Of a DNA stretch of 64,000 nucleotides, positions 25,933 through 49,459 are shown in pieces. A program made the position numbers and the translations under genes. The notes below the pieces were generated by a model. It was not told where the DNA came from and searched no databases. It saw only the letters and a program-made list of their open reading frames with translations. The stretch is from positions 744,001-808,000 of the forward strand of contig NW_026781893.1 in the NCBI RefSeq assembly GCF_031769215.1, in the 5' to 3' direction. Positions within the stretch are counted from its first letter, which is position 1. Each line of letters starts with the position of its first letter. The DNA is from Ylistrum balloti. Taxonomy: Eukaryota.

Positions 25933-27087
25933 ATTCAGGAAGATTCAGATCAACATCCTTCATACTCAACATATTCGTTGAAATAGAACTACCTCCCAGT
26001 ACAGGTATTTTCAGAGATATCGGAGGACATTTTTACCACATATGATATAACAGGTAAATCAAAACAAGTGGATTTACAATAACTTCCAAACCAGTAACAG
26101 CAGTGCTCAACAGTTTACACACATTAGCAGAAATTATCCACACAATCTTTATCCATTTACGCTGTTCAACTGACATGTGCACATGCAATTAGTTTTACTA
26201 ATGGAAAACAACACAACAAACTTTCATTCTGTAAATCTGTCATTACCTATTCCACTTACTGACTCCTTTAATCCTGCATCAGTCATTGTCTAAATCTCAA
26301 AAATAATCTACACAGTCTTAAATCCATTAATGACATAACATTTAATATTGACAGGTTTATTCGAGTGACTCATGCCTTCAGAGACAACATAAAATGTAAA
26401 AGCAAGAGGCCACATAAATCTTTAATAGCACTACCTTTTATAGTGCTTTCACCATATCTGAATAATTCATTTCTCCAGTAATAAGCTTTAAATTTTCCAA
26501 TCATGCGTCCTCTACTGACAATATAAAATGAAGCATGTTGGCAAACATTATTAAAAAATTAATGGTTTCAACTTTGAATAAAAATCTAGATTTAGTCATC
26601 AGAAAGCTCTAAAAGATTATCTAACCTTGACATATATCTTAACCGTGATTGTTTAGGATAGAAAATTGTCCAAATAAAGACCACTGTTAGTCTATTACTT
26701 TTAGTTATACTATGCAATATTTTAAACTCCAAGTTAATTTGACAATATTCAATAAATATCATAATGGAAAATGATGTCTTGTATAAATCTAAGCTTGTAA
26801 ATAGGATGAACAAAAATTTTTAATTCATTGATAAGAAATACATTTTTGCAGAATTCTAGCCTTAACATTCATTCCATTCAGAAAACATAATTTTTCACAT
26901 TTGTACTGACCAATATCAAACTCTTCTTTGTTCTGAACAACATTTAATTAGCATCATGACATGAACAAATGTTGAAGAAACACACCAGAGCATACATCAA
27001 TGTCAATCATACACAATATCTCCCTCTCTCTGTATTCTCTCAAAAAGTTATAAATAAAATTTGAAAAAAATAATCTAAATCTATGTT

Positions 27088-29923
27088 CTATAGCTCTTGC
27101 TTCTGTTGTCGTAGTTTGTATGCAGCTGGATCATATTTTGGCATGAGTTCCTCTACTGTACGTATGAAGTCTGATTTCTCTGCACATCCTTTACATGCAT
27201 CACTGCGGTCCCAGTCACTGAGAATTTCCTTCAGCTGCTTCACGCGTAGCTTCTTCAGGTCTATCTCGGCAAGGTTCATCTTCTTTTCTGTAATTAAGTT
27301 TACAAAAATTTTAAAATGAAGAAAAAATGTGGCAGTGTATGTAACACACTTCTCTTAAACAAAACAACTGGGTTTGATTTCATTTCATTTCACAAAGATT
27401 CCATTAAAAAACAAAAAAATAGGTATTAGGAATAGACTAAAGTCTATATCAGACCTAAGGTGGAAAAATGGATACATAGTTATTATATTACATAATGATA
27501 TATCATACATTCACTAAAACATGAACAACTGACATCTATGGGTACCACATATAATGAGTTACCTCCCCTATATCTTGTGCATGAAAAACTACTTCAAATA
27601 TATCTGGTATGTTTGATCATCTAATTATTGGAATGACAGAAAACAAATAATCCAGACAAATTAGACAAAGTGTGGTCTCTCTGTCTGAATGCATGATTTC
27701 ACTGTTTTCTTTCAGGCGGAGTACTACAAAATGTTGAAATAGTGGTTGACCACCAATGCTAACGCTGAACATCACTAAAAATTTCAAATTTCAATTGGCA
27801 AAAAAGTCTTGAAACTTACTTATTTTTATTTCACAAATCTGGGAATCTTTCTTATTCAATGTTTCACAAATCTTTTCTGCTGGTTTATTAAATGACAAAG
27901 GTCTTGTGATTTCATTAAGCATGCCTGTAGCTGATGTCTCCAGCCCTCCGATATAATAACACTGAAAATAAACAATTTATTATGTCAATGAATCTTTATG
28001 AATATTTTGATATATTAAAGCTGTTTCAAATCTATGTGTTGGATTTTTCTTTGCTTTATTTCTATATTTAAAAATGGGTAATTTCACTAAAGGTATTAGG
28101 GCCCACCTTTAGAGGCTATACATGTAAATCTATCAATTTGCAAAGCTGTGATTTTTTTAGGTTCAAACTGCTCGTTATTGATAGTCAAACAGTGCTTATA
28201 CTCATATTTTATAAGAGGTCATGGAATTTGTTTTGAAAAGCAGAGTTTTTGTGTTGGAAACCTGTAATTATTACAGGGAAAAACACAAATACTTACTAAA
28301 AATGATCATATACTTCAGGGTTATTTTTTTGTTGTCTAATAATTAAATACATTTTTAAGTTAATAGTACACTGTGGAAGTTTTTCACCTTTTGACTTCAT
28401 TGTATATTTTTGAGTTGCACTGAAAACTAGGTCATGTATGAATATTTCAATTTAATATGTTTATGAAATATGTTTAATCATGCATACTTACAATTCTTTC
28501 ATATTCTTTGGTTGTGGTTTTTTTACAAAAGGCTAATAATTCTGTCTTGATCTTGTCCTTATCTTTGCGTGTATTGTCTGATACAGTTTCATCGAATGCC
28601 TTCACAAAGTTCACACATGCTGTAAATGTAAAATAATTACAAATTCAGACGACAGTAGAGTATCGATCTTTAAGAATGACTGAAATCTCAAATAATATTT
28701 TACCATAATTAATACTAACAGATGGATTATAATTCTTTAATGTACATGTGCATTTTGCTGCTGGACCACACATGCACACGACAATAGAAAGACCTGCCAT
28801 GCTCCATCAGCTGAGTGAAAATGACCAATGGATCAGGTTGAAAATTTAAATGCTGATGGTGAATGAGAGACATTTTATGACAAACATGATGTGCATGTAT
28901 ATATTGCTACACAAAGTTTTGTCAATTCTTTTCTCATTTTAGTGAGGCTACCAATGCCATTCGGAGGATCTTGAATGGAAATCTGGGAATCTCAATATTT
29001 GTATTGTGTATGGCTGATAATGGAATTTCCACTTGATTTGTTAAATGTACTGTCTCATATAATACAAGTGCCAATGCTAAAATTCTCGACTATAAAACAT
29101 CATTAAAAGACTTTAAATTTCTATCAGGATTTATTAGGGATGGTAAATTAGTAATGGACACAGGCTTTAAACTCTATTCATATTATATGTATCAAGCAAA
29201 ATATTACAAGGCAGTTTGCACATAGTATTTCATCATGTAATAGTTGATATACTCAACATCATGAATGTATGATATCAAAATTACACAAAGTGTTTGTATA
29301 CGGTACAGCCACTACAGGGTCTTAATTCTTCCAATGTTTCAAACTCCATCTAAATGGATTTCAAATTTCTTAATTTCAATTTCACGTTCAAATGATTTTA
29401 TGTAATACATGTGTATTTCTGGGCTAACTTGAGTGTTTCTGTGATTTAGTGAAGTTACCAGAAGTGGAAGTGCAATCACGTCAATCATTTCAAGTATGTG
29501 ATTTTGAGATAGTATCTTTGGATATTTCTAGATAAAATATTTGCCTTTCATCAGTCAGTTTTTAAATAAATGTTATAGTATTAAGATATATCCAGTCATT
29601 TATGTATTTACTTGCAGGCAGTTTATCAGCTAATGAAAATCATTCTTAAGGGGTCCGAAACTGATACACCAAGTATATAATGTTCACATGTACAAAGTAA
29701 GATACTTGAAAGCCCTTATAACTTGTGTATTTTGCAACACCATTTCAATTTCATACATGACCTGGTCAATAGTTCCGTTCTACCAACAGATTCATTCAAA
29801 AAATGATTGTTTCTTTTACAAATGAATAGCTAATATACCTTCACAATCTTCTGGTCTGTACTTCGCATTGACGATGACAACACACCACGCGACAACTGTC
29901 AGACACACCAACTTCTTCTCCAT
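27088..29923 (-). CDS. MANF: MANF/CDNF (ARMET) family ER-stress protein, 184 aa
   Basis: Exons 29923-29839, 28619-28492, 27961-27820 and 27287-27088 (555 nt, GT-AG, phases 1/0/1). Has a signal peptide, 8 Cys, [20 protein letters not shown], the CKGC motif, ELMPKY and a C-terminal KQEL. Confidence 0.96.
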
Positions 29924-30237
29924 CGTTCCAATACTTAGAAAAGTGGTTCTGTTGTTGTGAAATTTCTGTTGAATTCTTGATTGTTCAGTATGAAACGACA
30001 ACAAGTTTCGGTTAAAACGTCTTACGTATGTAAACTTGTTTTTACTATTTTCATACAAAAGACATGTCAAAATGAAACGTGTACGTGAACGACTGTGATG
30101 ATACCGGTAAGTTACGTGTCCTACAGGAAGCACATGTACATCTGTCGTTCTGTGATTGGTGGAGTAAGTACTTCCGGGTTTTCACGGGTCATATTAGGGG
30201 TCATTGATGCGATCTCAAGAGAAACGAGATTTAAAAC
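29924..30237. promoter_or_regulatory. Probable bidirectional promoter and 5' UTRs shared by MANF and HSPA14
   Basis: Only 314 bp between the divergent ATGs. Contains an ETS motif ACTTCCGG (30170-30177), ATTGG/CCAAT (30155-30159) and several ACGT cores. No canonical ERSE or ERSE-II found. Confidence 0.75.
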
Positions 30238-33200
30238 ATGGCAGCCTTCGGTGTACACTTCGGGAATTCTTCAGCATGTTTAGCTGTGTTTAAGGTTAAT
30301 TATTTTTAACGTTTAATCTGCACTACTATAGTTGAATTCTTATACATCCAACTTTACGAATGATTGGAAGTAACAGTGGTGTAAAAAGTGACATTTTCCC
30401 GATCAGCACGTGCACGTGCGAAGGGTTGATGGGTGCATTCGAATTGCACCTATGGAATGTTAGTATAACCTGGCATTGTTAGAACCAGGAAAGTTGCCTA
30501 CATTCCTTTCTAAGTCTTCAGCAACGAAGACACCACTATTTAGAACCCAGGTTCAGATATCCCCTTGTCAACCTTTCCCCTACTGGAAACAAGGGTCGAC
30601 CGTGGGCAACATATATAACACGTGTAATTATGCGATCCCTAGCGGAATTATTCTTTTTTTTTCTACATGAACTGCTATTTTACCATAATGCAGCTGGTTC
30701 GATACTCAAGGGCCTGTTCCCATTATCACGAGTTTCGTGCAAGACATCAACTGACTGACAAACTCCTAACAAAGGGTTTCAGAAAATACAGGTTAATGAA
30801 AATAAAGGGGAAGTTTTATGGACGTCATATATATTCCATTTTTTTGTCCTATATGAAACTGGATGTGTTTAATGATAATTAGTTAAATTTGCCTGTTTGT
30901 TTTATTTTTGTATATATGCCTTATTCTAATTTTCAATTTTTGTATATATGCCTTATTCTAATTTGAAAATGTGACATTATTTACTTGGATAGTCCAAGTT
31001 ATACATGCAGAGTGTCATTGAAACAGAAGATGCTTACTTTTCCAGGACATTATGTATAGTCTTATTCTCCGGGTCCTCTTTCAAGAGTCTGTATTAATCA
31101 TTCTTTTTGGTATATTCTTGTTTTTTGGGGTTTTCTTGATACATTGTATAACAGAAAATAATTGATTGTAACTTTGGTATTAATTGTTTCTGATGAAATA
31201 TTGCAGGATGGGAAGACTGATGTGGTGGCCAATGATTTGGGAGACCGAACAACGCCAGCAATGGTGGCTTATACTGAATTAGAACAGGTAAAAACAATGT
31301 TGGCGTATATTGAGTTAGAACTGGTGAGGATCATGGTGGCTTAAACTCACTTACAACAAGTAAGGGTTCAGGTGGCTTACACTGAATGAGGACAGACAAG
31401 GACCATGGTTGCTTAAACTTAAGTTAAATTAGGTATGAACCATTGTGGTTTAGATTGAATTAAGACAGGTGGGTTACTCTGCAGAATTGGAGCAAGGAAG
31501 GGTTCAGGTAGCTTATAGTACACTGATTGACTGATTAAGAACAGGTATCATGGTTTACACTGAATTAAAACAGGTTGTGATCAGGGTTATGATAGCTTAT
31601 TTAGAATTAAAACAGGTAATAGAACAGTCTTTATTAAACACTGAATTAAGAATGAAAATGCTAAAATTTCCAAACAGTTTTGTTGTTAGTACGTGTGTTT
31701 GAAACCTGTCCCTGACACCCTAAAGAACATCTAATTTGTATAAATGTGATTTTTTATTACTTAAATAAAAACATTATATCCACATTCAACCTTATATTTC
31801 AGGCAGTAGGCATGGCTGCCAAACAAGCATATATCAGAAATGCTCAGAATACAGTTCCCTGTGTGAAAAAGGTCCTTGGCCGTGCTATGGATGATCCAGA
31901 AGTACAGGCATACAAAGATTGTTATGCAGTGAAGGTAAAGGGGAATAACTGTGTTTTATATTGTATACTGTTTCTACAGTGGAAATAAATTAATATTTTG
32001 ACAACATCATAAACATTTAACAAGGAAGAAAATAGAGGATAGGTTCAAAATTTAAAGATTCCAGGTTGTTAAATCTTCTCAACAGAATGGGAGATTTTGT
32101 TTGCCCACATTGTATCAGAATTAATTTCATGAAATATGTTTTAGAAAAAAATTACAAATCAGTTATAAGGATACAATGGATTGTGTTTGTTTACTTATTT
32201 GAACCTATTTGTACTAAATTGTATTGAAGAATGGATAAAGAATGCATGATTTTTTCACTTCTGTCTTCATTTGTGAAAGACAAAAATATCAACACCAACT
32301 CAAGATTCCTCAACAGTGAGTCAAGCAGGGAGCAGAAGGTATGAGTTTCTCTAACTAAAAACTATGTATCAAAGGACATTTTATTCATGTACAGTTTTTA
32401 AAAATCCAGCAAAGCAATTACATTAATGTATGGTTTTCTTTGTTTCTTAATTTGTAGGTTGTACCTCATAAAGGTGAGCCTCATTTTCAAGTGGAATTCA
32501 AAGAAAAGACAACACTGGTTAGTCCAGGAACTGTGGCTGAAGCAGTGTTCAAAACTATGATGGGTAAGAGATCATTGACTAGATCTAATATTTGTGCCAG
32601 CACTTCTCATTTAACATATAGAAAGATATTTGTAGTCATCACTGTATTCATCCGTCCATAAACGATCATTGTTATGATGATTTCTTGAGAAGTGCTGTAT
32701 GCACATTTCTCAAATTTCATATGTAGATTCCCTTTGGACCCTAGTTGTGCCTTCTTCATTTTGGGACTAATCAGAAACACAGAATAGCCAACAGGTGATT
32801 ATCTTGGATTTGACTGTTTAACATTATTATAAAAATTCAGAAGAATTTTCAAAAATTTCCTGTAAGTAAGGGCAAAAACAGGAAAGAAGAGAAAAGAAAG
32901 GAAAGATCCTCCATCTCTTAAAGAATAAATAAAGATCAAATGATGGTGGGACTCCCTTTGGGATCTCTTGTTTCAGTTTATAGTTGCTGAAGTCCAGTTA
33001 AATGTCTAAACTTCTTACATCAAGAGAAAATTATAACCCCGCAAGAAAATTTGGAGGAGGGGTGGTATATTGGAAGAACCCTGTCTGACTGTCAAGCAGT
33101 ATTTCTCAATCTAGACATACTACATCCTTATCGCTTTTCGTAAAATTTTGACAACATTTGTTAAGAGTTACACCCTTAAATGTAGATATTCTGTATGGAA

Positions 33201-36200
33201 GATTTTGTCAATTGTGTCTGATAAAGTACTGAAGCAATATTTCTCAAACTTAGCATCCTGCATCCCTATGATATGATGTGCCCTTTCATTTAAACATGAT
33301 CAGATGCTACAGCTGATTATAGCCTAGGATTTGACACATCAGGTGTTTCCATGGAAACACTTTGGAGGCTTCTGATTGGTTGAAGTTAAGATGTTATCTA
33401 ATTAAGTTGAAAATTGGTATAAAAGGTTTAGGGGAATGACAAATACAAGGATAACATTTTTGAAAAAAAAGTTTGGTTGCCATGGTGACCAAATTAAGAC
33501 CTCTTGGTGGAATCTCATTGGGACAACCCCTCTGAAACTATTGTTGATTGGGGAGGGAGTATATTGTATTATTGAAGGTGCTATGGGAGTACTTTGAACC
33601 TCCTACTTCAGATAATCAGTGTATTTGTTTTAATCACACAAACCATTTACTGATTGATTCAGTATGAGGACAAATTTACATCTCTTGTTTGCTAATTAAG
33701 AAAGTTTTATTAGTTCTGCTATAAAATTCAACATGACAGAAAAGCTGCTATAAAATTCAACATGACAGAAAAGCTGCTATAAAATTCAACATGACAGAAA
33801 AGAATATCTCTGACAAATGAAAATATCTTTCATTAAATGTTCACCAGTGAAATATAAAGAATTAGATAGTGTTATTTTTCACAATAATGGAAGACAACAA
33901 GTTTGTGTCAATTTTTACACATAATAGTACAATAGTAGAGGGGCATTCATATTCACCCCAGTTTATATATACATCCGAAACATTAAGTTAATTTTATTTT
34001 GAAAATCTTTTAAGTCACAAAACATGACATGCACATTACCTAGACAATTTTTGTTTTTTTGTCTGTTTCTCTGGAACTGTGATTACCCAGTTTTGTTACT
34101 TCACATGTTCATTTATCTTGCACAGTACTTACCTGCCATTATTTGTAGGTCAGTGTGACCTATATTTTTTACTTTGTTTGGTTAAACAATTACTTTGGTT
34201 AGACTTAACATGAGTATTAGATTCAATTTAAAACTTTTATTTTTTTCATCAGGTATTGCCAAAAGTCATGGGGATGGAGACATACACGACTCTGTGTTAA
34301 CAGTGCCTACTAATTTTACAGAGGAACAAATAACAGCCATTAGGTGATTAATTTAGCACAGCAATAAACAGCCTGTTATTTTGAGGGAATATTTGTAGGT
34401 ACCATAGAAATCAAAGTGGAGGGGAGTGTAAGATTAAAAATATTCAAAGCTATCAGAGGGTGAAGACACTTACCTTTGGTAATGTTGTTAATTCTTTCTT
34501 TAAAATAATCACCTTTAACTGCCATCAAATATTACTCTCATTGGCTGTCTTCACACTTTAATATAAAAACAGATTTTAAAAGGATCCATTTTTAAAATTG
34601 TATTCAAAGTCTGATTGGTGAAGTTATGTTTGTTAGTGATGCTGCAGCTTCAGGAGGGTTCAATATTCTACGAGTGATTAAAGAGCCACTGGCAGCACTC
34701 ATGGCATATGATATCGGACAGATGGAAAACAAAACAGAGAGGTAATATAAATGTTTAGAAAATTTTAATAATTAAGTACAAAGACATTACTGATGATCGT
34801 TAAAAATATTTTTTCTGTCTCTAACAAGAATGCAAGCTTAACTTGGTTCTAAAACTGATATACAGGAAATATTTCCTTGTAAATTGGTCATAATGTAACC
34901 AAAGTTTGCTGGAATTATACTCCTTACAAAAGTCTTTATAAACTAAGGTACTTATTAATGTACAATTTTGACATATGTCCATTGGCTTGATCTTATGTAT
35001 TTGTGTCTGTCAGTATACATGTTGATCATTTACCAATTAGTGTTCAAATTATGCCACACATCTGTCTTACAATGTAACACCAGTACAATCAAATACCATT
35101 TCATTTCTTTATGCTTGTCTGCCTATACCCTACCAATAACTGCCCTGTAAAAATTTAATATCAAAAGGGTACAAGAAGGCCAGGAAAATTGATGATAATG
35201 AGATAATATCTGTTTACAGTTGTACATTGGTATTCCGCCTCGGTGGAGAGTCGAGCAGTGTCTGTGTAGTCAAGTCGTATAATGGTCTGTACCGCATCAT
35301 GGGTTCTGTCAACAGTACCCAGTTGTCAGGGTCAAAGTTTACTAAAGCCCTGGCAGACCACTTAGCAGCAGAATTTTACAGGTAACCTACTCTTATAGGT
35401 CATTGATTGTTCCTTGGCTCTGGATGTTACCAGGTACATAAAGATTTCATGTGTTACAATTTCACATCTTTAAGATATGATTTGGGAATTTGATGTTACT
35501 TTCTCAGTTCAGTTTTAAGTACTTTTCCTGATATTTTGATGGTTCTTACATATGATACTTTCTCCGTAAATCATATTGAATTGTTATCTTTTTATGGCAC
35601 TTAAAAATCTGGAACAGTCTTATCATACACAAATAATTATTTTGCTATCTGTACAGATTAAATCATCTTACTCCAACTTTACAGTATTTCTATTCTGATA
35701 TCATTTGATAATGTCAGATTTTACAATTTCATTTGTAATCTTGCTCAACCTTTATTGTTTGTTTGAGTGGTTTTATGTCTGTTTCACTTCTGAGTGATTT
35801 AGTTTTTCAAGAGACCTGGCATATTTAATCTTATATGAGAAATGTGGAATTAGAATGAAGAATTACTGATGCAGACATGTTTAAAAGTGTTCTTTGCAGT
35901 ACTGTTTTCACTTACTTTAAAAGTTTTTTTCTGCCAAGAGTGCTAATGGGTGCGATATTTTATTAAATTATATCAATTTAAATTCAAATAATTTTTCTCT
36001 TTAAGGTACCTATATGTTATTACTTTGTTTTAATTTTCATAACGATAACAATAGACAGTGCTTTGCTGTAGGGCGTTGTACTTTTTGATATTTCAGACAG
36101 TACAAACTTGACGTGAAGGAGAGTCGGCGGTCATTGAGTAAACTCAGTGTGGCAGCTGAGAGGTGTAAACACACATTGTCTACCCTTGGCAATGCTTCCT

Positions 36201-39200
36201 GTGCTGTTGATTCTCTGTTTGAGGGTGTAGACTTCCACAACAGTGTATCCAGGTAATCCTCGCTAAAGATGATGTAGTATTCTGCTCAGAAATGTGCCCA
36301 ATTTCACTTTTAATTATTTCCAGAGAAAATCAATGGACCCTTCTCACCAATATGGATTCTACCTGATGATTAATAGTAATAGAATCACTACCCACGTAGA
36401 GTTGAGATGGGATGATCTCAACCCAATGGGAAAGATTCTCAAGCTGTCAAACAGGAGGCTTGATGAGTGATTGCCATCTTAAGAATCTTTCCATGATGGT
36501 TAGATCTCCATATGTTATGTTGCATTGTCAGTGCTAGACATTGTTGTCAGGACAATGTGACATCATTGAATTGTTACTGTGTTGTCCTGACAGGGAAATC
36601 TTCCCTATCTCCCTTTAGGATATGGCAATTAAATCTCACCTAGTTAAAACATAGATACCTCTATCCTGGGTTAGAGAATATTTTATGTACTTTAATGTAA
36701 GGGCGACCTCTATAGATATATCTCTGTAAAATTTTCAATACAGTAAATGATATCTTTAATAATATTGGTTAATTAACAACACAGATAAATTGAGTGGAAT
36801 TATTAGGTCAGTATTATAAATTTAGAACTTTCTTGACAATATCTGTTCATGTTGAATCCACAGATTTACATTAAAGATAACTGTTTTAAGAAAAATAATA
36901 GTAACATGTGTATCCATACCATGGATACCTCTAGAAAGCCATGCATGCTTGTTAAACAGTACAAGATGACCAGACCAAAGCCAGTCACTGACTGTCCACT
37001 TGTAGTCAGCTGATCTGGATACAACCATGCTACATCAAATTGGTGGTTTAAGGTCTTCCTGGCCAAGTTTTGCCACAGGAGAAGTATGTCCATCAAACAA
37101 ATGCAAGCACTCGAGTAAAGATGTATATGTTTGTGAAGGTCAACTACAACAACAATTTATCAGTATCATAATGTTTATTTTACAACAACAATTTATCAGT
37201 ATCATAGAGATTGTTTATTTTACAACTACAACAACAATTTATCAGTATCATAAAGATTGTTTATTTTACAACTACAGCAGCAATTTTTCAGTATCATAAA
37301 GACTGTTTATTTTAGGATAGGTGTTTTCATTTCCGCTACTAAACAGAAACACACCTGTGTAATTGATGAACTTATTTTCATGCAGCACTTAATTTTTTAC
37401 TGCATATTCAGGGATGATGTGATTTTATTGTTCCTTAAGTAAAGACATTTCCACTAACCTTCAAACATTTCCACTTCCCTTCCCTACAGACACTAGTAAT
37501 TATAATGTTGTTTTCCACTCTGTCAGTCCATCCATGTATCTGTGAAAATTTGTCAGCACTCTAGCAGCTTCATTCCTTTAGGGATTCTTGTCAAAATATC
37601 TTTTACAAGTTTTAGTTTTAGGGTTTTTGAATCAAGGTCAAGGCCAATAACTAGAAATTAGAAAATCATTGTCAGTGCTCTAGTGGCTTTATTCCTTGAA
37701 GAATTTTGGAATTTCTCAAAAATGAAATTTCCATACAGTAAAACACATCTTGAATTTTTGCAGGTTTAAAATTTATTGTTAAAGCAAATAAAAGCATTGC
37801 ACCTGTCTGTTCGAAGTTTTAATGTTCTGATATATTTTTTACATTGCCAGAAGTCATATTCAGCTAATTTTCATAAATTCATGAGTGAAGCATGTATATA
37901 ACAGGAGGGACCAGTGACCATTCCTATATGGTCAACTGTTTTAGAAATACATGCTATATGAACAAGGCGTTCATAGGTTTCTCTTGGTTAAATGTGGCCA
38001 TGGAGAGATAATCACACCTGACAAGAATGAAATCCAGCTCAAACTATAAACAGGTGCCTGTTTTCAGTAATGTAGGTAACATTGGCATTTCCCATAATTG
38101 AATTACAGATGTGCTATCTGTAACTGAAACAAGTTCAAAGCTAGTAACATGTATGACATAAATCTCAGAGGTTTATTGTGAATAGTGGAAGAAGTAATGA
38201 AAGTCCTGTCCGGGAAGGTAGCTTATAACTGTAGCACAACAATGAAACCTCAATGGACCAGCATTGTTGAGATATAAGATTTTACACATTAACCAAATTA
38301 GTGTTTGCCAAAAGGAGTGAATGAGACACATAGAGTATGTTACATGATTTTCAATGTAACAAAATTTATTATACAAATTGAGTGATATGACATGACATGA
38401 GCCTTTAAGCAGGTGACATATGAAACTATCTAATGAGTTAAGTAAATTCCATGTTACACCGATGTGCACAAGTGTAAGATACTATTTATCATTCAGCCTC
38501 TTTTTCTGAAAAAGAAGCAAAAGCTCTCAAATTGATTTACCTTTAAGACTATTTTTGGATGCAGATGTAACATTTTTCTCTACCTTTAAATAGCGATACA
38601 AGAAATCATGTGGAGGCGACATATAGTCAAGAGACAGCAAAACAGTTATAGAAATAATAGGTACTACAACACTCTATAAAGGGACATATAGTCTAAAAAC
38701 AGCTTATTACTTATTGTGTTGCCTGCAGAGCTGGCGGACACTTAGGGATCACTTTGTCCGTCATCACACGTCGACGGTGGCGTCTGCGGTGTCCATAAGA
38801 AAGTTTTCCTGACTTTTTTCGGTTATGCTTTAAGTTTTCAAAATTAAATTGAGTATATGGCTTCTTGTTGGAAGGGTACAGATTAAGTTAGATTCCTGGC
38901 TGTCTGTAACACTTCTTGGCAGAGTAATGCCTGTTTGAACTTAGAAAATTCTCTGGGAATATTTTTTTCCTGACTTTTGCAGGTTATTCTTTGAGTTATT
39001 GAAATGAAATTTGGTATATGGCTTCTTGTTGGAAGGGTACAGATTAGTTTTGACATCCAGTTAGATTTCTGGGTGACCGTGACACTTTATTTTGCGACAC
39101 ATATTCTTTGAGTTATTGAAATGAAATTTGGTATATGGCTTCTTGTTGGAAGGGTACAGATTAGTTTTGACATCCAGTTAGATTTCTGGGTGACCGTGAC

Positions 39201-42200
39201 ACTTTATGCATGCGACACATACAGTTCCGAAAAATTTGCTCCCAATTTGCTACTCAATACTAAATCATAATAGTAATAGTGACTATTTCTGTAGATTGTT
39301 CCTTCTAAACAAAATTTTAGGATGCATCAACTTACTCTAATTAAATAAAAATTTGATCATTAACTCTTATGTATACCATATAGAGTTAATATGGTGATAG
39401 CTATGTGGTATTTAGCTCTGATTGTATTTGTGAGTGATGCATGTATATAACAGGAGGGACCAGTGACCATTCCTATATGGTCAACTGTTTTAGAAATACA
39501 TGCTATAGGAACAAGGTGTTCATAGGTTTCTCTTGGTTAAATGTGGCCATGGAGAGATAATCACACCTGACAAGAATGAAATCCAGCTCAAACTATAAAC
39601 AGGTACCTGTTTTCAATAATGGATGTAATATTGGCATTTCCCATAATTGAATTACAGATGTGCTATCTGTAACTGAAACAAGTTCAAAGCTAGTAACATG
39701 TATGACATAAATCTCAGAGGTTTATTGTGAATAGTGGAAGAAGTAATGAAAGTCCTGTCCGGGAAGGTAGCTTATAACTGTAGCACAACAATGAAACTTC
39801 AATGGACCAGCATTGTTGAGATATAAGATTTTACACATTAACCAAATTAGTGTTTGCCAAAAGGAGTGAATGAGACACATAGAGTATGTTACATGATTTT
39901 CAATGTAACAAAATTTATTATACAAATTGAGTGATATGACATGACATGAGCCTTTAAGCAGGTGACATATGAAACTATCTAATGAGTTAAGTAAATTCCA
40001 TGTTACACCGATGTGCACAAGTGTAAGATACTATTTATCATTCAGCCTCTTTTTCTGAAAAAGAAGCAAAAGCTCTCAAATTGATTTACCTTTAAGACTA
40101 TTTTTGGATGCAGATGTTACATTTTTCTCTACCTTTAAATAGCGATACAAGAAATCATGTGGAGGCGACATATAGTCAAGAGACAGCAAAACAGTTATAG
40201 AAATAATAGGTACTACAACACTCTATAAAGGGACATATAGTCTAAAAACAGCTTATTACTTATTGTGTTGCCTGCAGAGCTGGCGGACACTTAGGGATCA
40301 CTTTGTCCATCGTCACACGTCGACGGTGGCGTCGGCGGTGTCCATAAGAAAGTTTTCCTGATTTTTTTCGGTTATGCTTTAAGTTTTCAAAATGAAATTG
40401 AGTATATGGCTTCTTGTTGGAAGGGTACAGATTAGTTTTGACATCCAGTTAGATTTCTGGGTGACTGACATTTTATGCATGCGACACATACAGTTCCGAA
40501 AAACTCGTGTAGAAATAGTAGGTAGTACAACACTCCCAATTTGCTACTCAATACTAAATCATAATAGTAATAGTGACTATTTCTGTAGATTGTTCCTTCT
40601 AAACAAAATTTTAGGATGCATCAGTTTACACTAATTAAATAAAAATTTGATTATGACCTCTAACGTGTACCATAATGAGTTAATATGGTGATAGCTATGT
40701 GGTATTTAGCTCTGATTGTATTTGTGAGTGATGCATGTATATAACAGGAGGGACCAGTGACCGTTCCTATATGGTCAACTGTTTTAGAAATACATGCTAT
40801 AGGAACAAGGTGTTCATAGGTTTCTCTTGGTTAAATGTGGCCATGGAGAGATAATCACACCTGACAAGAATGAAATCCAGCTTAAACTTTAAACAGAAAT
40901 AAGTTTTCTATTAAAGATATATGTTACTTTGTCATTGCCCAAGATTATTTTAGAGTTGTCTCCCTTCGAAATTGCAAGTATGTATGAAGTTGATAATTTT
41001 GATAAAATAGATAGTACTTAGGAATTACCTAAAGGGATACAAACTATATCACAAAGGACGGCAACATACCACACAACCTTATCTTCCTACGGAACCAGGT
41101 GAGACCCCTGATGCAACAGTGTAAAAGTCTTATTTATGTATGTGAATTGTTATAATGAACTATCCTCTCTGTATTTAGGGTGCGGTTAGAAAACCAGTTG
41201 GACCCCTGATGCAACAGTGTAAAAGTGAATTGTTATGAAATGAACTATCTTCTATGTATTTAGGGCACGGTCAGAGAACCACGTTGGGCCCCAGATACAA
41301 CTGTTTACAAGTCTTATTTATGTATGTGAATTGTTATATTATGAACTATCCTCTTTGTATTTAGGGCGAGGTTAGAGAACCAGGTTGGACCCCTGATGCA
41401 TCAGTGTACAAGTCTTATAGATGCAGCTTGTAGTGATGCTGAAATAACAACAGACCAAATAGACAAGGCAAGCCTACACAGAACAATACATCCTTATAAG
41501 TTAATAAACATGTATATTTTCTTTGTGTGAAATTTGATTCAAACTAATAAAAATCATTTATTTGCTTTATAATCATTTATATTTTTATCAAGTCTTAAAA
41601 ATCATATTTGTTGGAGATAAAGAGTTATTTCCCTTTTATCAAAGGTTACTCCTGTTTGTGGTGAAAAGCTATATTTTGTTCTTTCTTTTAATTTTCTTAA
41701 CAGGTGATTGTTTGTGGTGGTGGAGCAAAAATGCCTTTGGTTCAGAAAACAATTAAGGACTATATCAAAACTGCAGAGATTTTAAGCTCCATTCCTCCAG
41801 ATGAAGTTATAGCGATTGGCTCAGCCAAACAGGTAGGATACTTCTACCAATAATGGCTATCTAGATCAGTATAGGATAGAACTAGAGGCTTGAAGAAGCT
41901 GATTCTCCCTTTGTCTGTTTTAGGTTTAGCCAGTTACATTGCCCCCTGAATGTCAGGTAGATAGAATTACTGGGTTGAAGAAGAGTCAGATACTTTTATA
42001 CATTTATCCTGTTTCACCAACTCTTATAGAGAAACAAATAATGTCACATAGACCATAGTTTCAGTACAGAGTACCTATCTAAACCATACCACTTCACACA
42101 TATGTAGTCTTGCATTTATAAATAACTACAGATTGAGATTTTGTATAGGATACTATGATCTTTTAATGTATAGCTATGTGTTTGATTTACAATTAACAAC

Positions 42201-42759
42201 ACCTGAAATGTTTTTTAAACTTTGAAATAAGTCATAGAGGATGCTTGTTTTTTTTTTTTGGATAGTGAGGATAAACACTGTAGTACTGTATACTGAAAAT
42301 TTTCCAAAATTTTTGTCATTTTTGCTCAATAAGAACAGGGCTATTTTTAACATGTACTGAAAGATTAACTACTCCTGACCGGAAAAAATTCATATCTGAT
42401 TTTAGTAAACTTTAAACTGTTCGGAAAAAAGTTTCCTGTTGGTATCACATGTAGTACTGATATGTTTGTAGGCTGGTATTCTCACAGGATGTGATGCAAC
42501 AGAAAGTAAAGAAAATGCAGAGGATAATGAAATAGAATGCTTGTCAAAGACTGTGTGTCTAAGGGTAAGTTAGGAATGTTTTTTAAACATTGTGCTATCT
42601 GCATTGTAAAAGTAAAACGATCTATAGTATGTATTGTTTGATATATTGCAGCATTCACATACAACCATTATGTAACGGTTCCTTTATCTATTACTTATTT
42701 CAATAAAAATATCAGATACATCAATTTAAAAAAAAAAACTTGCATGTTCTCTGCAGTGA

Positions 42760-42795
<36 letters not shown>

Positions 42796-43949
42796 ATATC
42801 ACTTTTAATGTACCAGCTGTGCAGTGATGAATCATGATGTACAAAGTATAAATATTGATGTTGGATTGCATGTACAAGTGTATCTATGAAAACAGTGTTT
42901 TCTAATTAGTGCAGATCAGGAAACAGTGAATTAAGAGGTTGCTTTGTTATGCATTTACTACATAGATTGTGCTGTTTACCTATGTACTCAATTAATTGTA
43001 TTTCTATGTATAGTCTTGCAGCAATGGTGAGACCAGACTGGAATTGGTGTTCCCATCCCTGACCCCACTCCCATCCCGTAAACATGAGACTGTGATGTTG
43101 GGCGATCATCAAACATCTTTACAAATGGATCTGTGCGAATGTGATGACCTTCAGCAACCAGACACTGCAGCAGACCTTGCCAAGGTTAGTAAGCACGAAA
43201 GTTCAGTGGTAATTTGTCATGATGTCTTGTCTGGATTCTTGAACATAGAACAATGTAAGAATTTGTATTAAAATCATGATTCAAACATAATATCTTTAGC
43301 CAGGACATTAAAAATACGAATTTATAAAGCAAAATGGCTTCCAGACTATTGACATTACAATTTGAAATTTTGGGCAGCATTTTGTCCCTGAAACTGTACA
43401 AAAATAAACAATATTTTTCCCTTCACAGCTTGTGATGAGAGACTTACCAGAAGCAGCTAAAGTGTTAGTTACCTTCCATCTAAGAAGGTGAGAAACATTA
43501 AGTTTAGCAATTATAGAAATAATCATTGGTTATGTTTTGTTAATAGAGAAAATCAAAACCCTTTCCAAATTTGTTTTGATTGAATCCATACATGTTTCAT
43601 TCTTTGATTACAGTATTAATCAAGTTTTTTTTCTGTAGTAAAAATTGATATTTTCAATAAGAGTAAAAGGAGATTTTGTCTGGGAAAAAGAGCTTTAAAC
43701 GTATACAACAAGAAAATCCTTAAATTCAAACTTAAAGACTATGAGTAAGCCATTTGATGCTATCTATACGCCAAACACTTACAATGAAATATTTTGATTT
43801 GGCTACACAAAAAATACCACCGCTCCTTCAGTAGATTTAGATTTTCTTCAGACCAATTTGTACATTATAGGGAAGGCTCCCTCCATGTGACATGTCGGGA
43901 GGAGACATCAAACAAAACCGAGTCTGTCGTTGTTGAGGTATGCAGCTGA
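30238..43949 (+). CDS. HSPA14: HSPA14 (Hsp70L1, ribosome-associated complex subunit), 507 aa
   Basis: Exons 30238-30294, 31207-31287, 31803-31934, 32458-32563, 34253-34343, 34637-34741, 35220-35381, 36097-36252, 41365-41467, 41704-41832, 42472-42564, 43014-43184, 43429-43487 and 43871-43949 (1524 nt, phases consistent; intron 9 is GC-AG). [45 protein letters not shown] and GSLHVTC are characteristic of HSPA14. Confidence 0.95.
30560..30835 (+). mobile_element. Penelope-like element reverse-transcriptase C-terminal relic in HSPA14 intron 1
   Basis: [46 protein letters not shown] matches the recalled PLE pattern SQLIRYARAC...LTxKLLxQG...KFYGRH. The upstream part is frameshifted. Confidence 0.8.
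31261..31650 (+). repeat. Degenerate 36-bp tandem array derived from the 3' end and donor site of HSPA14 exon 2
   Basis: ATGGTGGCTTATACTGAATTAGAACAG|GT is repeated at 31261, 31297, 31333, about 31370, about 31405 and about 31442, with further decayed copies to about 31650. Confidence 0.88.
32600..33640. mobile_element. Helentron-like (HINE-type) fragments in HSPA14 intron 4
   Basis: ATCCGTCCATAAAC...CAAATTTCATATGTAG, TTATAACCCCGC...GGGGTGGTATATTGGAAGAACCCTGTCTG and GTTGCCATGG-type palindromes. Probably nested pieces. Confidence 0.5.
33715..33801. repeat. 29-bp tandem repeat, 3 copies
   Basis: CTGCTATAAAATTCAACATGACAGAAAAG x3. Confidence 0.95.
37140..37312. repeat. ~40-45 bp tandem repeat, 4 copies
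   Basis: TTTACAAC(TAC)AACAACAATTTATCAGTATCATA(A/G)AGATTGTTTAT units. Confidence 0.9.
37882..40890. repeat. Recent kb-scale tandem duplication (2 full copies plus 1 partial) in HSPA14 intron 8
   Basis: Anchor GCATGTATATAACAGGAGGGACCAGTGACC occurs at 37890, 39439 and 40733 (periods 1549 and 1294). The twin 98-aa ORFs differ at one residue. Copy 1 has three internal copies of TATGGCTTCTTGTTGGAAGGGTACAGATTA; copy 2 has one. Confidence 0.95.
41090..41415 (+). repeat. 85-101 bp tandem array of the intron 8/exon 9 junction of HSPA14
   Basis: TGAACTATC..TGTATTTAG|GG acceptors end at 41178, 41263 and 41364. Each is followed by a copy of the first ~50 nt of exon 9. A fourth partial copy starts at about 41092. 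Confidence 0.92.
42763..42790. repeat. (TA)n microsatellite
   Basis: About 14 TA units, read directly. Confidence 0.95.
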
Positions 43950-46690: not shown

Positions 46691-48271
46691 AATGAGATCT
46701 TAAGTATCAAACATAATAAAGAAAGAACTAATTTGTTAGATCTAGATTATAAATAGTTATTCTCAATACGGAAAGAACTAGGACGAAAACCACGTATAAG
46801 ATCTCGTTAGATTAAGATTAGGTAAAGTATCAACGTCGTAAGATTTTGTTAACCATAATGCCGAATAATCGTAGAAAGCACATGCCCAGTCGTGGTAGAT
46901 TATTATAGTCATCATTTGTCGAGATTTATCATAGAGAAAAACATTTAGTATGCTATAAATGATATAACTGTACATCTATTTCCCTGTGTATATTGAGTGT
47001 GACAGGAGACGCGAACCATGGCGAGGATTATATCAGAAAGTCCGTCCCATCAATCAGAACACTTGTTCGTTACAATGAATGAATCTTTAACGGTTGATTT
47101 TGAGTCTCAGTTGGGGAATACTTTTTCTAAAAAATATTGATTGGTGGTACAACAATTATAGAATGTTGTGGGAAATGTCCTCTGTGTTTTTATCTATTTA
47201 TCAATTATTTAATCAAGTTTTAGAGAGTTTTTAACCATCACTGCTATAAATGGGACCCAATTCTGTTTTCGGCCATCGCTCCCAAATTGTACGGTTTCCC
47301 CTTTCTCACCCCTTGAACTTTATCGAGTGTTGTTTTGAAATGCACACAAATCAACAAGCAATGTGCGTCTTACGTTATCGGTGATGGTCTGTAATCACCT
47401 GAGAGCCAGCCCATAGTTGTCGCCTGCTCAAATCGACCGCCAAACCTTTGCGTAAGTTATTTTTCTATCATTATCTCGGTTTTCAGTTTTAAAAAAATCA
47501 CTAGGACTAGTAAATGTGCATTCTTCTCAGACGAGTCAATATAACACCATATTTGATGATAAATTGTTATGGCGCTTATCTATTTCCCGATCATATGTTC
47601 AGGACCATATGCTTGTTTACGCATAGCAAAAATCGCTGATCAGAAAAAAAATAATTTTCATTATATTACGAGAGGAGGGCCATTGATCACTTTATATGAT
47701 CTATTACCGACCGATATCCCTGTTGTGTTGAAAATTTTCGTGTCAAAAAGTATGTTTTTACATATAACACAACTACTTTAACAAAGTCACTCCTTAATAA
47801 GATAAAGACCTTTTAAACTTTACGTTATGACAAACGGAAATGGAATGAAAATCATTGTTTAATGACAGGATTCTCATAAGACTTTTGATAAGTCGTTTCT
47901 CGTCTAATTTTTAGTGCTATTGTATCAGGACTTTAATAATGCATGAAAAAAGTGTGATGTCTATTCGTTAAATGTGACTAAATCCAGTTGTACAATATTT
48001 CCCATGAATGTAACATACTGCATATATCATTCGAATGAGAAAACAAACTTTAAAAGTCTGTATCGATTCCACTGGGAAATTTCGTAAATAGCTGACCATA
48101 ATTCTACCTCGTTATACTTTATCCGGATTTTAAGTATGCCGCAAGTTGCCACTGATTATTCAGTTTCAAATCCACAGAAAATTCACATTTTCTAAATTGC
48201 TTTTTGTGTATGTTTTTTTTTTTTTTTTGCAATATCATAGTTATTTCAATATACTGTTCTTTCATTGTAGA

Positions 48272-49459
48272 ATGTGTGTGGCGATTTATCTCCTGTGTGT
48301 AATCGGGCTGACCCGAGCTCAAGAGAGACTCAATGATCTTCAGTTCCGTTCGTTTGGAAATCCGACGTCTGCAACGCAATTGCAAAGATCTGCTCAACAA
48401 TTTCGGATCCCTACCGCATTTCCAAATGGATTTCATTCACCTAGTATTTCTCCGGCTCTAATTCGACACAATATCGCAGGACCGAATCCGTTTGGAAGAA
48501 ATAGGAACAGTTTGATGAACTCCAATGGTTTATTGATGATGTTTCCGACCCAGGCTGGTCGCTTGATTCCAGGATTGGCCTTTAATCGTCCAGCACCGTT
48601 ATCATCTGTCCTTCAAAGACCTGCGTTCCCTTTTACACCACCAAGTGTACATCGACTTAACAGAGGACGTAATGCTATAAGTGAAAATTCAGGACAGCGT
48701 TTGGCTGGATTAAACCAAGATCGCCCATCTCTTTCGGGGATGCGCCGACCTAATGGTGTTACTCCCAGAGGGCAAAACGTCGTACCTCAGACAAGACCCT
48801 CATCATCGCAACCACGAAATCCTGCAACATCGGACAAGGCAACGCAAAGAATTGTCGACTTTATATTGGGGAAGAAGAGTCAAAACACCAACCAAAACCC
48901 TATACAGCCTACTGTAGATACTATAAGTAATGTAGAGATGGCCAAACCACCTCCAAGAAAGTCGGTGTTTCCAAATCCAACAGGACTGTCCACAAATGTC
49001 GTAGACATTAATAAAGCATCACCCGAAATCCGTTTTAAATCAAGGACTGACGAGGAAATAAGGCAAGAAGTAGAGGAAAGAATGAGACAGCTTAATGCAT
49101 TTCTCGCCAGAAATCCAGCAGCCATAGCATCTCCAATCCATAATGTGGTAAACAACCATCATTTACCTCATAACATCCGGCATTATTTCAATAATGTCAA
49201 TCGCCGTACGGAACGAGTCGACCAAAACACTTTGAACACAAGAGTCATGGAAGCATTCAAAAACCGCGACAAAAGTGGTAAAAAACCAATTGTAGTTGAT
49301 GGTGGTGTCGCAGAGCAAGTGATGCCTACCATTGTCGTCGATGGAGGTGTTTCATGGAGAAACCAAGGTATTCATCTTGACCAAAACCAGCGACCACGTG
49401 CATTTAATCTAGAAACGGACAAAGAGCTTGCCAAGCTCTTTCCAATTCCTCCATCATAA
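48272..49459 (+). CDS. Orphan secreted Asn/Pro/Arg/Gln-rich low-complexity protein, 395 aa
   Basis: Acceptor TTCTTTCATTGTAG ends at 48270, then ATG at 48272. Signal-peptide-like MCVAIYLLCVIGLTRA|Q. Single 1188-bp open frame with GC content above the flanks. AATAAA at about 49765 and 49794. The longer ORF start at 48146 runs through intron-like poly(T) sequence. Confidence 0.85.
   Translation: MCVAIYLLCVIGLTRAQERLNDLQFRSFGNPTSATQLQRSAQQFRIPTAFPNGFHSPSISPALIRHNIAGPNPFGRNRNSLMNSNGLLMMFPTQAGRLIPGLAFNRPAPLSSVLQRPAFPFTPPSVHRLNRGRNAISENSGQRLAGLNQDRPSLSGMRRPNGVTPRGQNVVPQTRPSSSQPRNPATSDKATQRIVDFILGKKSQNTNQNPIQPTVDTISNVEMAKPPPRKSVFPNPTGLSTNVVDINKASPEIRFKSRTDEEIRQEVEERMRQLNAFLARNPAAIASPIHNVVNNHHLPHNIRHYFNNVNRRTERVDQNTLNTRVMEAFKNRDKSGKKPIVVDGGVAEQVMPTIVVDGGVSWRNQGIHLDQNQRPRAFNLETDKELAKLFPIPPS

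What the first reader, a model, noticed from the sequence alone, without database searches (positions are those of the whole stretch)
27088..43949. Head-to-head MANF/CDNF-HSPA14 pair matches the human CDNF-HSPA14 arrangement
Seen: divergent ATGs 314 bp apart, with ETS and CCAAT motifs between them. Established (recalled): human CDNF and HSPA14 are adjacent, divergently transcribed genes on 10p13, whereas human MANF lies elsewhere. Inference: the pair predates the protostome-deuterostome split, CDNF rather than MANF occupies the ancestral locus, and an ER-luminal protein and a ribosome-associated chaperone have shared a promoter since then.
Basis: partly seen in the sequence, partly recalled or inferred. 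Interest (0 to 1): 0.8.

Follow-up and report, generated by a model that had tools for sequence, protein, structure and literature searches.

The report
Ancient head-to-head MANF–HSPA14 gene pair
In this scallop genome the single MANF/CDNF-type gene and the ribosome-associated chaperone gene HSPA14 start 314 bases apart and point away from each other; another scallop, a sea snail, amphioxus and (as CDNF–HSPA14) a fish have the same arrangement, so the pairing most likely dates to early bilaterian animals.

Summary
A 4-exon MANF homolog lies on the minus strand (27088-29923, 184 aa, identical to the NCBI Ylistrum balloti MANF homolog). A 14-exon HSPA14 lies on the plus strand (30238-43949, 507 aa). 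Their start codons are 314 bp apart, around a CpG-rich island with an ETS site and CCAAT boxes.

I found the same divergent pair in four other genomes:
- Pecten maximus, gap 305 bp
- the gastropod Gigantopelta aegis, gap about 3 kb
- amphioxus, gap 319 bp
- spotted gar, as CDNF–HSPA14, gap 352 bp

I did not find it within 10 kb of MANF in oyster, acorn worm, horseshoe crab, sea anemone or a sponge. Frog MANF sits between DOCK3 and RBM15B with no Hsp70 gene nearby.

A family tree puts vertebrate MANF and CDNF together as a vertebrate-only duplication (support 100/99), so the scallop gene is co-orthologous to both. CDNF kept the HSPA14 neighbour and MANF did not. "CDNF occupies the ancestral locus" is therefore only half right if the duplication came from whole-genome doubling.

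A shared bidirectional promoter is likely: the gap is short, there is one CpG island, scallops share a conserved footprint, and the same NF-Y/ETS arrangement appears in three lineages. It is untested because no RNA data exist.

This is a new example of a known kind, a conserved ancestral microsyntenic pair. I found no paper describing it.

The parts
29839..29923 (-). MANF homolog exon 1 (ATG, signal peptide, first CxxC)
   Evidence: Spliced model with GT-AG borders gives a 184-aa ORF identical to NCBI Ylistrum balloti MANF homolog P0151
28492..28619 (-). MANF exon 2 (ARMET_N, first half)
   Evidence: Pfam ARMET_N, E 2.3e-5 on the exon alone; model
27820..27961 (-). MANF exon 3 (ARMET_N, second half)
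   Evidence: Pfam ARMET_N, E 7e-20. tblastn alignments in most of the compared loci start at residue 72, the first residue of this exon
27088..27287 (-). MANF exon 4 (ARMET_C SAP-like domain with CKGC, C-terminal KQEL, stop)
   Evidence: Pfam ARMET_C, E 1.5e-20; translation; the only ARMET_C in the genome
29924..30237 (.). 314-bp gap between the two start codons: putative bidirectional promoter
   Evidence: CpG o/e is 1.16 here against 0.0-0.35 in both gene bodies. It aligns with Pecten as well as the exons do, while the introns do not align
30113..30178 (+). Scallop-conserved promoter block holding ETS-like AGGAAGC (30125-30131), inverted CCAAT/NF-Y (30155-30159) and ETS ACTTCCGG (30170-30177)
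   Evidence: Ylistrum/Pecten alignment is nearly identical over this block. The same ATTGG-then-CTTCCGG order and strand occurs in amphioxus and gar
30238..30294 (+). HSPA14 exon 1 (ATG; atypical GVHFGNS in place of the canonical GIDLGTT)
   Evidence: 100% identical over 19 aa to the Pecten exon, 74-79% to gar and Gigantopelta
31207..36252 (+). HSPA14 exons 2-8 (31207-31287, 31803-31934, 32458-32563, 34253-34343, 34637-34741, 35220-35381, 36097-36252): nucleotide-binding domain
   Evidence: Model; Pfam HSP70 on exons 2, 7 and 8. The best PDB matches of exon 7 are the four Chaetomium 'Putative heat shock protein' chains, which I recall to be Ssz1, the RAC Hsp70. The gar HSPA14 exon finds window exon 8 as its best hit in the whole scallop genome
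41365..43949 (+). HSPA14 exons 9-14 (41365-41467 with a GC donor, 41704-41832, 42472-42564, 43014-43184, 43429-43487, 43871-43949): end of the NBD and a short substrate-binding region, then the stop
   Evidence: Model gives 507 aa, the same length as the Pecten product. Pfam HSP70 on exon 10. The C-terminal 26 aa are 58% identical to the gar gene

Best explanation
The window holds the scallop's single MANF/CDNF pro-ortholog and its HSPA14 ortholog as a divergent pair whose start codons flank a 314-bp CpG-rich promoter region. This head-to-head pair was most likely already present in the last common ancestor of molluscs and chordates. It has been kept with almost unchanged spacing (305-352 bp) in scallops, amphioxus and ray-finned fish. 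After the vertebrate-stem duplication of MANF, the copy that stayed next to HSPA14 became CDNF, and MANF lost the neighbour. The likely mechanism of retention (inferred, not shown) is that both core promoters sit inside one short, unmethylated NF-Y/ETS-type housekeeping promoter. Almost any breakpoint between the genes would then damage at least one of them.
For: Gene models and identities; the MANF model equals the NCBI Ylistrum MANF homolog. Single-copy MANF. Divergent Hsp70-family neighbour of about 507-511 aa next to MANF/CDNF in Pecten (gap 305 bp), gar (508 aa, gap 352 bp, then a DCLRE1C-like gene) and Gigantopelta (gap 3051 bp), and of 567 aa in amphioxus (gap 319 bp); the start codons bounding each gap were checked. 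In all four loci these neighbours match the scallop HSPA14 better than they match three canonical scallop Hsp70s (summed bits 603 vs 131, 118 vs 40, 304 vs 268, 86 vs 41). Reciprocal best hits hold for an amphioxus exon and a gar exon. Mammalian gene order CDNF-HSPA14-SUV39H2(-DCLRE1C): PMC5144969 and PMC5774710; sole BAC with cdnf and hspa14: PMC6579814. Tree: vertebrate MANF+CDNF clade 100/99, amphioxus sister 80/84, longer CDNF stem. Promoter: one CpG island spans both 5' ends. The intergenic block is conserved between Ylistrum and Pecten while introns are not. The ETS octamer on the same strand, with an inverted CCAAT on its MANF side, is found in scallops, amphioxus and gar, and almost nowhere else in these loci.
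Against: The pair was not found within 10 kb of MANF in Ostrea edulis, Ptychodera flava or Tachypleus tridentatus (bilaterians), nor in Exaiptasia or Sycon. It is therefore dispensable and has been lost repeatedly, and its age beyond Bilateria is unsupported. The gastropod gap is about 3 kb, so a shared core promoter is not universal. No RNA run exists for this species, so TSS positions, co-expression and true bidirectionality are untested. NF-Y/ETS motifs are generic for housekeeping promoters and do not prove promoter homology. From my own knowledge, mammalian CDNF is expressed at a low level and tissue-selectively, whereas HSPA14 is ubiquitous, which argues against tight co-regulation. Only 12 genomes could be sampled.
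Confidence: 0.8

Rival explanations
1. The linkage is ancestral but neutral. The pair simply survived in slowly rearranging genomes (scallops, amphioxus, gar) because a 0.3-kb gap is a tiny target for breakpoints. There is no co-regulation and no selective value in the adjacency.
For: The lineages that keep the pair are, to my knowledge, ones known for conservative genome organisation. It has been lost in oyster, acorn worm and horseshoe crab without loss of MANF. The products act in different compartments. The pair was picked post hoc from thousands of adjacencies.
Against: Spacing is nearly constant (305-352 bp) across more than 500 My in three lineages. The intergenic sequence is conserved like coding sequence between scallop genera while introns are not. 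The same motif order and strand recurs. Irimia et al. 2012 (PMC3514665) show that conserved 5'-5' pairs with gaps under 1 kb are enriched beyond neutral expectation.
Confidence: 0.15
2. The juxtaposition is convergent: MANF and HSPA14 came to lie head-to-head independently in molluscs and in chordates.
For: The pair is absent in the cnidarian and sponge sampled and in several bilaterians, so a patchy distribution is formally compatible with several gains.
Against: Two named genes becoming immediate neighbours by chance is of the order of 1 in 10,000 per genome. Repeating that with the same orientation and a gap of about 0.3 kb in two phyla is far less likely than shared ancestry with losses.
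Confidence: 0.03
3. The adjacency is kept because the products are functionally coupled. For example, the MANF SAP-like C-terminal domain, known to bind the nucleotide-binding domain of the Hsp70 BiP, might also act on the HSPA14 nucleotide-binding domain, or the two might be dosed together as a proteostasis module.
For: MANF stabilises BiP-client complexes (Yan et al. 2019, as cited in bioRxiv 10.1101/847996). That it does so through its C-terminal domain binding the BiP nucleotide-binding domain is my own knowledge. HSPA14 is an atypical Hsp70. Both genes belong to protein-folding homeostasis.
Against: MANF is ER-luminal or secreted (signal peptide, KQEL end), while HSPA14 works on cytosolic ribosomes with DNAJC2. 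No interaction test could be run because the spliced HSPA14 has no usable reference. The coessentiality work cited places them in different modules.
Confidence: 0.02

Closest known systems
Vertebrate CDNF–HSPA14 neighbour pair (human 10p13, mouse chr2, gar)
   Same: An ARMET-family gene and HSPA14 lie divergently, with start codons 352 bp apart in gar against 314 bp here. An inverted CCAAT followed by a CTTCCGG ETS site sits just upstream of the HSPA14 ATG.
   Different: In vertebrates the partner is the derived paralog CDNF and the block continues into SUV39H2 and/or DCLRE1C. In the scallop the partner is the single MANF pro-ortholog, no DCLRE1-type gene lies on this contig, and a PM20D1-like gene lies on the other side of MANF.
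Conserved ancestral microsyntenic pairs (CAMPs) of Irimia et al. 2012, Genome Res 22:2356 (PMC3514665)
   Same: Unrelated neighbouring genes kept adjacent across metazoan phyla, mostly 5'-5', with a subset having gaps under 1 kb that are interpreted as bidirectional promoters.
   Different: This pair is not named in that paper's main text. Its supplementary lists could not be read, so I cannot tell whether it is among the roughly 600 pairs.
HSPD1–HSPE1 (Hsp60/Hsp10) bidirectional chaperonin pair
   Same: An ancient head-to-head pair of protein-folding genes with a gap under 1 kb and a shared promoter, conserved from humans to unicellular relatives (PMC3514665).
   Different: Hsp60 and Hsp10 form one machine in one compartment and are strongly co-expressed. 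MANF (ER lumen or secreted) and HSPA14 (ribosome-associated complex in the cytosol) have no known physical link.

Membership tests
MANF/CDNF (ARMET) family | N-terminal saposin-like ARMET_N domain and C-terminal SAP-like ARMET_C domain | tested here: met
   Pfam ARMET_N (E 7e-20 and 2e-5) and ARMET_C (E 1.5e-20) on exons 2-4
MANF/CDNF (ARMET) family | Eight conserved cysteines including a C-terminal CxxC, an N-terminal signal peptide, and a KDEL-like C-terminal tetrapeptide | tested here: met
   The 184-aa translation has 8 Cys after the hydrophobic N-terminus, CKGC in the C-domain and a KQEL end. The signal peptide is inferred from hydrophobicity only.
MANF/CDNF (ARMET) family | Orthology: pro-ortholog of both vertebrate paralogs, rather than a CDNF or a MANF specifically | tested here: met
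   In the tree, invertebrate sequences lie outside a vertebrate MANF+CDNF clade (100/99) with amphioxus as its sister (80/84)
HSPA14 (Hsp70 member 14, the RAC subunit; fungal counterpart Ssz1) | Hsp70 nucleotide-binding domain with a shortened C-terminus (about 509 aa, against about 640 aa in canonical Hsp70) | tested here: met
   HSP70 Pfam hits on exons 2, 7, 8 and 10. The model is 507 aa, against 633-642 aa for canonical scallop Hsp70s.
HSPA14 (Hsp70 member 14, the RAC subunit; fungal counterpart Ssz1) | Closer to HSPA14/Ssz1-type proteins than to canonical Hsp70 | tested here: met
   The best PDB matches of exon 7 are four Chaetomium 'Putative heat shock protein' chains, which I recall to be Ssz1 (RAC), ahead of Hsc70. 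The gar gene between CDNF and a DCLRE1C-like gene matches the scallop gene over its full length including the C-terminus. Reciprocal best hits hold for 2 of 4 exons tried, with one near tie. The margin is modest for gar (304 vs 268 bits).
HSPA14 (Hsp70 member 14, the RAC subunit; fungal counterpart Ssz1) | Forms the ribosome-associated complex with DNAJC2/MPP11 | not testable with these tools
   Known for the human protein (cited in bioRxiv 10.1101/847996). No reference exists for the spliced scallop protein, so no complex prediction was run.
Conserved ancestral microsyntenic pair | The same two orthologs are immediate neighbours with conserved relative orientation in distant phyla | tested here: met
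   Mollusca and Chordata, always 5'-5'
Bidirectional promoter pair | Divergent transcription start sites less than 1 kb apart | tested here: inconclusive
   The start codons are 314 bp apart and one CpG island spans both 5' ends. However, TSSs were not observed and no RNA run is available.
Bidirectional promoter pair | Co-expression or shared cis elements that drive both genes | not testable with these tools
   Only motif and conservation evidence is available

The most novel reading that the evidence does not exclude
The MANF–HSPA14 pairing is more than a regulatory accident. It would be a 550-million-year-old co-dosed proteostasis module in which a MANF-type SAP domain (a known binder of an Hsp70 nucleotide-binding domain, BiP) and an atypical Hsp70 are functionally linked. 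On this reading vertebrate CDNF, not MANF, inherited that ancestral regulatory and functional coupling.
Probability: 0.06. Interest if true: 0.75.

Novelty: new member of a known kind. Interest (0 to 1): 0.5.

Why it matters
MANF and CDNF are studied intensively as ER-stress regulators and as candidate Parkinson's disease therapeutics, yet the origin of the two paralogs is usually discussed from protein sequence alone. The evidence here gives a different picture. The paralog that diverged more in sequence (CDNF) kept the ancestral genomic and promoter context next to HSPA14. The conservative paralog (MANF) sits in a different neighbourhood, between DOCK3 and RBM15B. This offers a concrete, testable hypothesis for how the two paralogs came to be regulated differently. 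It also adds a clear, compact example (a gap of about 0.3 kb preserved from scallop to fish) to the catalogue of deeply conserved bidirectional gene pairs.

Tried and rejected
- RNA evidence: the look-up of sequencing runs (kind rna) on 27000-32999 returned one run of unrecorded kind that holds the stretch, and no holder on record as RNA. Read laying was therefore not used, and splice sites and TSSs rest on sequence and homology only.
- Wasted context look-ups: the window's own MANF (P0151) and Montipora (P0172) gave no record. All 12 look-ups are spent, so annelids, echinoderms, insects, tunicates, lamprey and a second cnidarian could not be sampled.
- Extended synteny: no DRMBL (DCLRE1-type) gene lies on the window's contig. 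Only the two-gene core is shared with vertebrates.
- UPR elements: no ERSE or ERSE-II was found in any of the five gaps scanned. Bare CCACG occurs only in amphioxus and Gigantopelta, and ACGTG cores occur in all but gar.
- The PDB search with the HSPA14-specific exon 12 found nothing.
- The reciprocal search with the most conserved gar Hsp70 exon was uninformative, because intronless canonical Hsp70s score higher through longer alignments.
- Full-length HSPA14 could not be sent to the word search, the cluster look-up or complex prediction. A spliced protein has no reference here and I did not type it.
- Literature: no paper in the searchable library links MANF/CDNF to HSPA14 by synteny, microsynteny, ohnology or a bidirectional promoter. 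The supplements of Irimia et al. are not held.
- No human contig was fetched or searched. The human arrangement rests on papers and on gar.
Full report
**What is in the window**

The genome is that of the saucer scallop Ylistrum balloti. My MANF model is letter-for-letter identical to the protein NCBI names 'mesencephalic astrocyte-derived neurotrophic factor homolog [Ylistrum balloti]' (P0151).

On the minus strand, four GT-AG exons encode a 184-aa protein:
- 29923-29839
- 28619-28492
- 27961-27820
- 27287-27088

The protein has a hydrophobic N-terminus and eight further cysteines, including CKGC, and it ends in KQEL. Pfam gives ARMET_N and ARMET_C. ARMET_C occurs only once in the 648-Mb assembly, so this is the scallop's only MANF/CDNF-type gene.

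On the plus strand, fourteen exons from 30238 to 43949 encode a 507-aa Hsp70-family protein. One donor, after exon 9 at 41467, is GC rather than GT. Four features mark this gene as HSPA14:
- Exons 2, 7, 8 and 10 hit Pfam HSP70.
- The N-terminus reads GVHFGNS where canonical scallop Hsp70s read GIDLGTT.
- The protein is about 130 residues shorter than canonical Hsp70.
- The best solved-structure matches of exon 7 are four Chaetomium 'Putative heat shock protein' chains, which I recall to be Ssz1, the Hsp70 of the ribosome-associated complex.

The finding's coordinates are exactly the two stop codons.

**The observation**

The two ATGs are separated by 314 bases. The gap holds these motifs:
- ETS octamer ACTTCCGG at 30170-30177
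- an ETS-like AGGAAGC at 30125-30131
- an inverted CCAAT inside CTGTGATTGG at 30155-30159
- a forward CCAAT at 29928-29932

The octamer occurs only twice in 64 kb.

The region from about 29.8 to 31.0 kb is a CpG-rich island: CpG o/e is 1.16 over 29800-30199 and 0.77 over 30200-30999. It is flanked by strongly CpG-depleted gene bodies (o/e 0.0-0.35). That is the pattern expected for one unmethylated promoter shared by two constitutively expressed, body-methylated genes. This interpretation is an inference.

**Synteny survey**

An exhaustive profile search with MANF exon 4 and two word searches gave named MANF and CDNF proteins from many phyla. I looked up the genomic context of twelve of them, with 10 kb on each side.

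| Species | Group | Upstream neighbour of MANF/CDNF | Gap between start codons |
|---|---|---|---|
| Pecten maximus | bivalve (scallop) | divergent Hsp70-family gene, 507 aa | 305 bp |
| Branchiostoma floridae | cephalochordate | divergent Hsp70-family gene, 567 aa | 319 bp |
| Lepisosteus oculatus (CDNF) | ray-finned fish | divergent Hsp70-family gene, 508 aa, followed by a DCLRE1C-like gene | 352 bp |
| Gigantopelta aegis | gastropod | divergent Hsp70-family gene, 511 aa | 3051 bp |

In each case the codons bounding the gap are ATGs. tblastn with the scallop HSPA14 hits these four loci and no other. In each of them it outscores three canonical Hsp70s taken from the same scallop genome. The amphioxus exon 2 and one gar exon find the window's HSPA14 as their best match in the whole scallop genome. 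One further exon is a near tie, and the most conserved exon is uninformative.

No Hsp70 gene, and no HSPA14-like exon, lies within 10 kb of MANF in five species:
- Ostrea edulis
- Ptychodera flava
- Tachypleus tridentatus
- Exaiptasia diaphana
- Sycon ciliatum

tblastn on these loci was also negative. Two look-ups returned nothing. Frog (Spea) MANF lies between a DOCK-family gene and an RRM/SPOC gene, the DOCK3-MANF-RBM15B order I recall from human, and has no Hsp70 neighbour.

Papers list CDNF, HSPA14 and SUV39H2 together at human chr10:14.9 Mb (PMC5144969). They give Cdnf-Hspa14-Suv39h2-Dclre1c in mouse (PMC5774710), and cdnf and hspa14 on one sole BAC (PMC6579814). I fetched no human DNA.

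**Age of the pair**

The pair is present in two mollusc classes and two chordate lineages, always 5'-5', and with nearly the same 0.3-kb gap in three of them. Independent juxtaposition is very unlikely. The parsimonious reading is a pair already present in the mollusc-chordate ancestor, followed by losses in oyster, acorn worm and horseshoe crab. The sampled cnidarian and sponge lack it, so an older origin is unsupported, though one species each cannot exclude it.

**Which vertebrate paralog is 'ancestral'**

A maximum-likelihood tree of 28 MANF/CDNF proteins recovers a vertebrate MANF+CDNF clade (100/99). Amphioxus is its sister (80/84), and all other invertebrate sequences lie outside. CDNF has the longer stem branch (0.39 against 0.075). 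The scallop gene is therefore co-orthologous to both paralogs.

CDNF, the faster-evolving copy, kept the HSPA14 neighbour, and MANF did not. The duplication may have been part of the vertebrate genome doublings. From memory, human 3p21 and 10p13-15 share several paralog pairs; I could not test this. If so, both loci are equally ancestral and the MANF side merely lost its HSPA14 duplicate.

**Is the promoter shared?**

Evidence for a shared promoter:
- Both 5' UTRs and core promoters must fit in 314 bp, unless an upstream non-coding exon exists.
- One CpG island spans both 5' ends.
- Between Ylistrum and Pecten, only the exons and the block 29836-30309 (both first exons plus the gap) align. Introns do not align, apart from one element noted in passing.
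- Within the gap, a block of about 65 bp (30113-30178) carrying both ETS sites and the CCAAT box is nearly identical between the two scallops.
- The same grammar, inverted CCAAT (…TGATTGG) followed by CTTCCGG on the HSPA14-sense strand, recurs in amphioxus and gar. It recurs almost nowhere else in about 25 kb around each locus.

Evidence against, or missing:
- These motifs are typical of housekeeping bidirectional promoters in general, so they indicate a promoter class, not homology.
- The gastropod gap is 3 kb.
- No RNA data exist for this species.
- No ERSE-type unfolded-protein-response element was found in any of the scanned gaps.

**Comparison with what is known**

Conserved ancestral microsyntenic pairs are an established class. 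They are mostly 5'-5', and a subset has gaps under 1 kb (Irimia et al. 2012, PMC3514665). HSPD1-HSPE1 is the textbook chaperone example.

The MANF/CDNF-HSPA14 pair fits this class. I found no paper that mentions it. The supplementary lists of Irimia et al. could not be read, so it may already sit in a table there. I rate it a new member of a known kind. It is of moderate interest, mainly to people working on MANF and CDNF evolution and regulation.

**Limits**

- Only twelve genomes were sampled, with 10-kb flanks.
- The absences mean 'not within 10 kb'.
- HSPA14 orthology rests on exon-wise similarity, protein length and position, not on a full tree.
- All statements about transcription are inference.

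Noticed in passing
window 36943-37099 (+), HSPA14 intron 8; Pecten L003 about 1023-1180 (-): A single-copy intronic element is 85% identical between Ylistrum and Pecten, while the rest of the intron does not align. The consensus fold is hairpin, ACATCA hinge, hairpin, ACA, with conservation ending right after the ACA and two compensatory pairs. It looks like an intron-hosted H/ACA snoRNA with no Rfam family.
   Followed up: partly
window 37889-41000, HSPA14 intron 8: About three tandem copies of a unit of roughly 1.3-1.5 kb; the same open frames recur near 37889, 39438 and 40732. Two copies give weak H/ACA snoRNA-like Rfam hits (ceN102, E about 0.05, below the gathering score) at 39436-39575 and 40730-40869.
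   Followed up: no
window 41142-41418: 85- and 101-bp tandem repeats duplicate the acceptor region of HSPA14 exon 9. Only the last copy (exon start 41365) fits the reading frame, and this exon then uses a GC donor at 41468.
   Followed up: partly
window 31261-31650: The intron after HSPA14 exon 2 begins with a run of degenerate repeats, each ending in ...aacaggt like the true donor (seen).
   Followed up: no
L004 18456-19286 and L005 14866-16291: A DUF4504 (PF14953) gene lies just downstream of MANF in both amphioxus and the acorn worm Ptychodera. This may be a second old deuterostome linkage of MANF.
   Followed up: no
L006 about 9714-9867 (gar CDNF–HSPA14 gap): Six inverted CCAAT boxes (…ATTGG…) spaced roughly 24-43 bp apart fill the gar intergenic region upstream of the ETS site.
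   Followed up: no
window 57130-59178 (+) and 48146-49459 (+): Two long intronless ORFs (682 and 437 aa) lie in CpG-rich stretches and have no Pfam match. The 682-aa one is in the ESM Atlas with a very low-confidence model and only low-complexity look-alikes (hornerin-like). It may be a disordered protein gene or a spurious ORF.
   Followed up: partly
L003 23871-25526; window upstream of MANF: A PM20D1-like Peptidase_M20 gene follows the 3' end of MANF in Pecten.
   Followed up: partly
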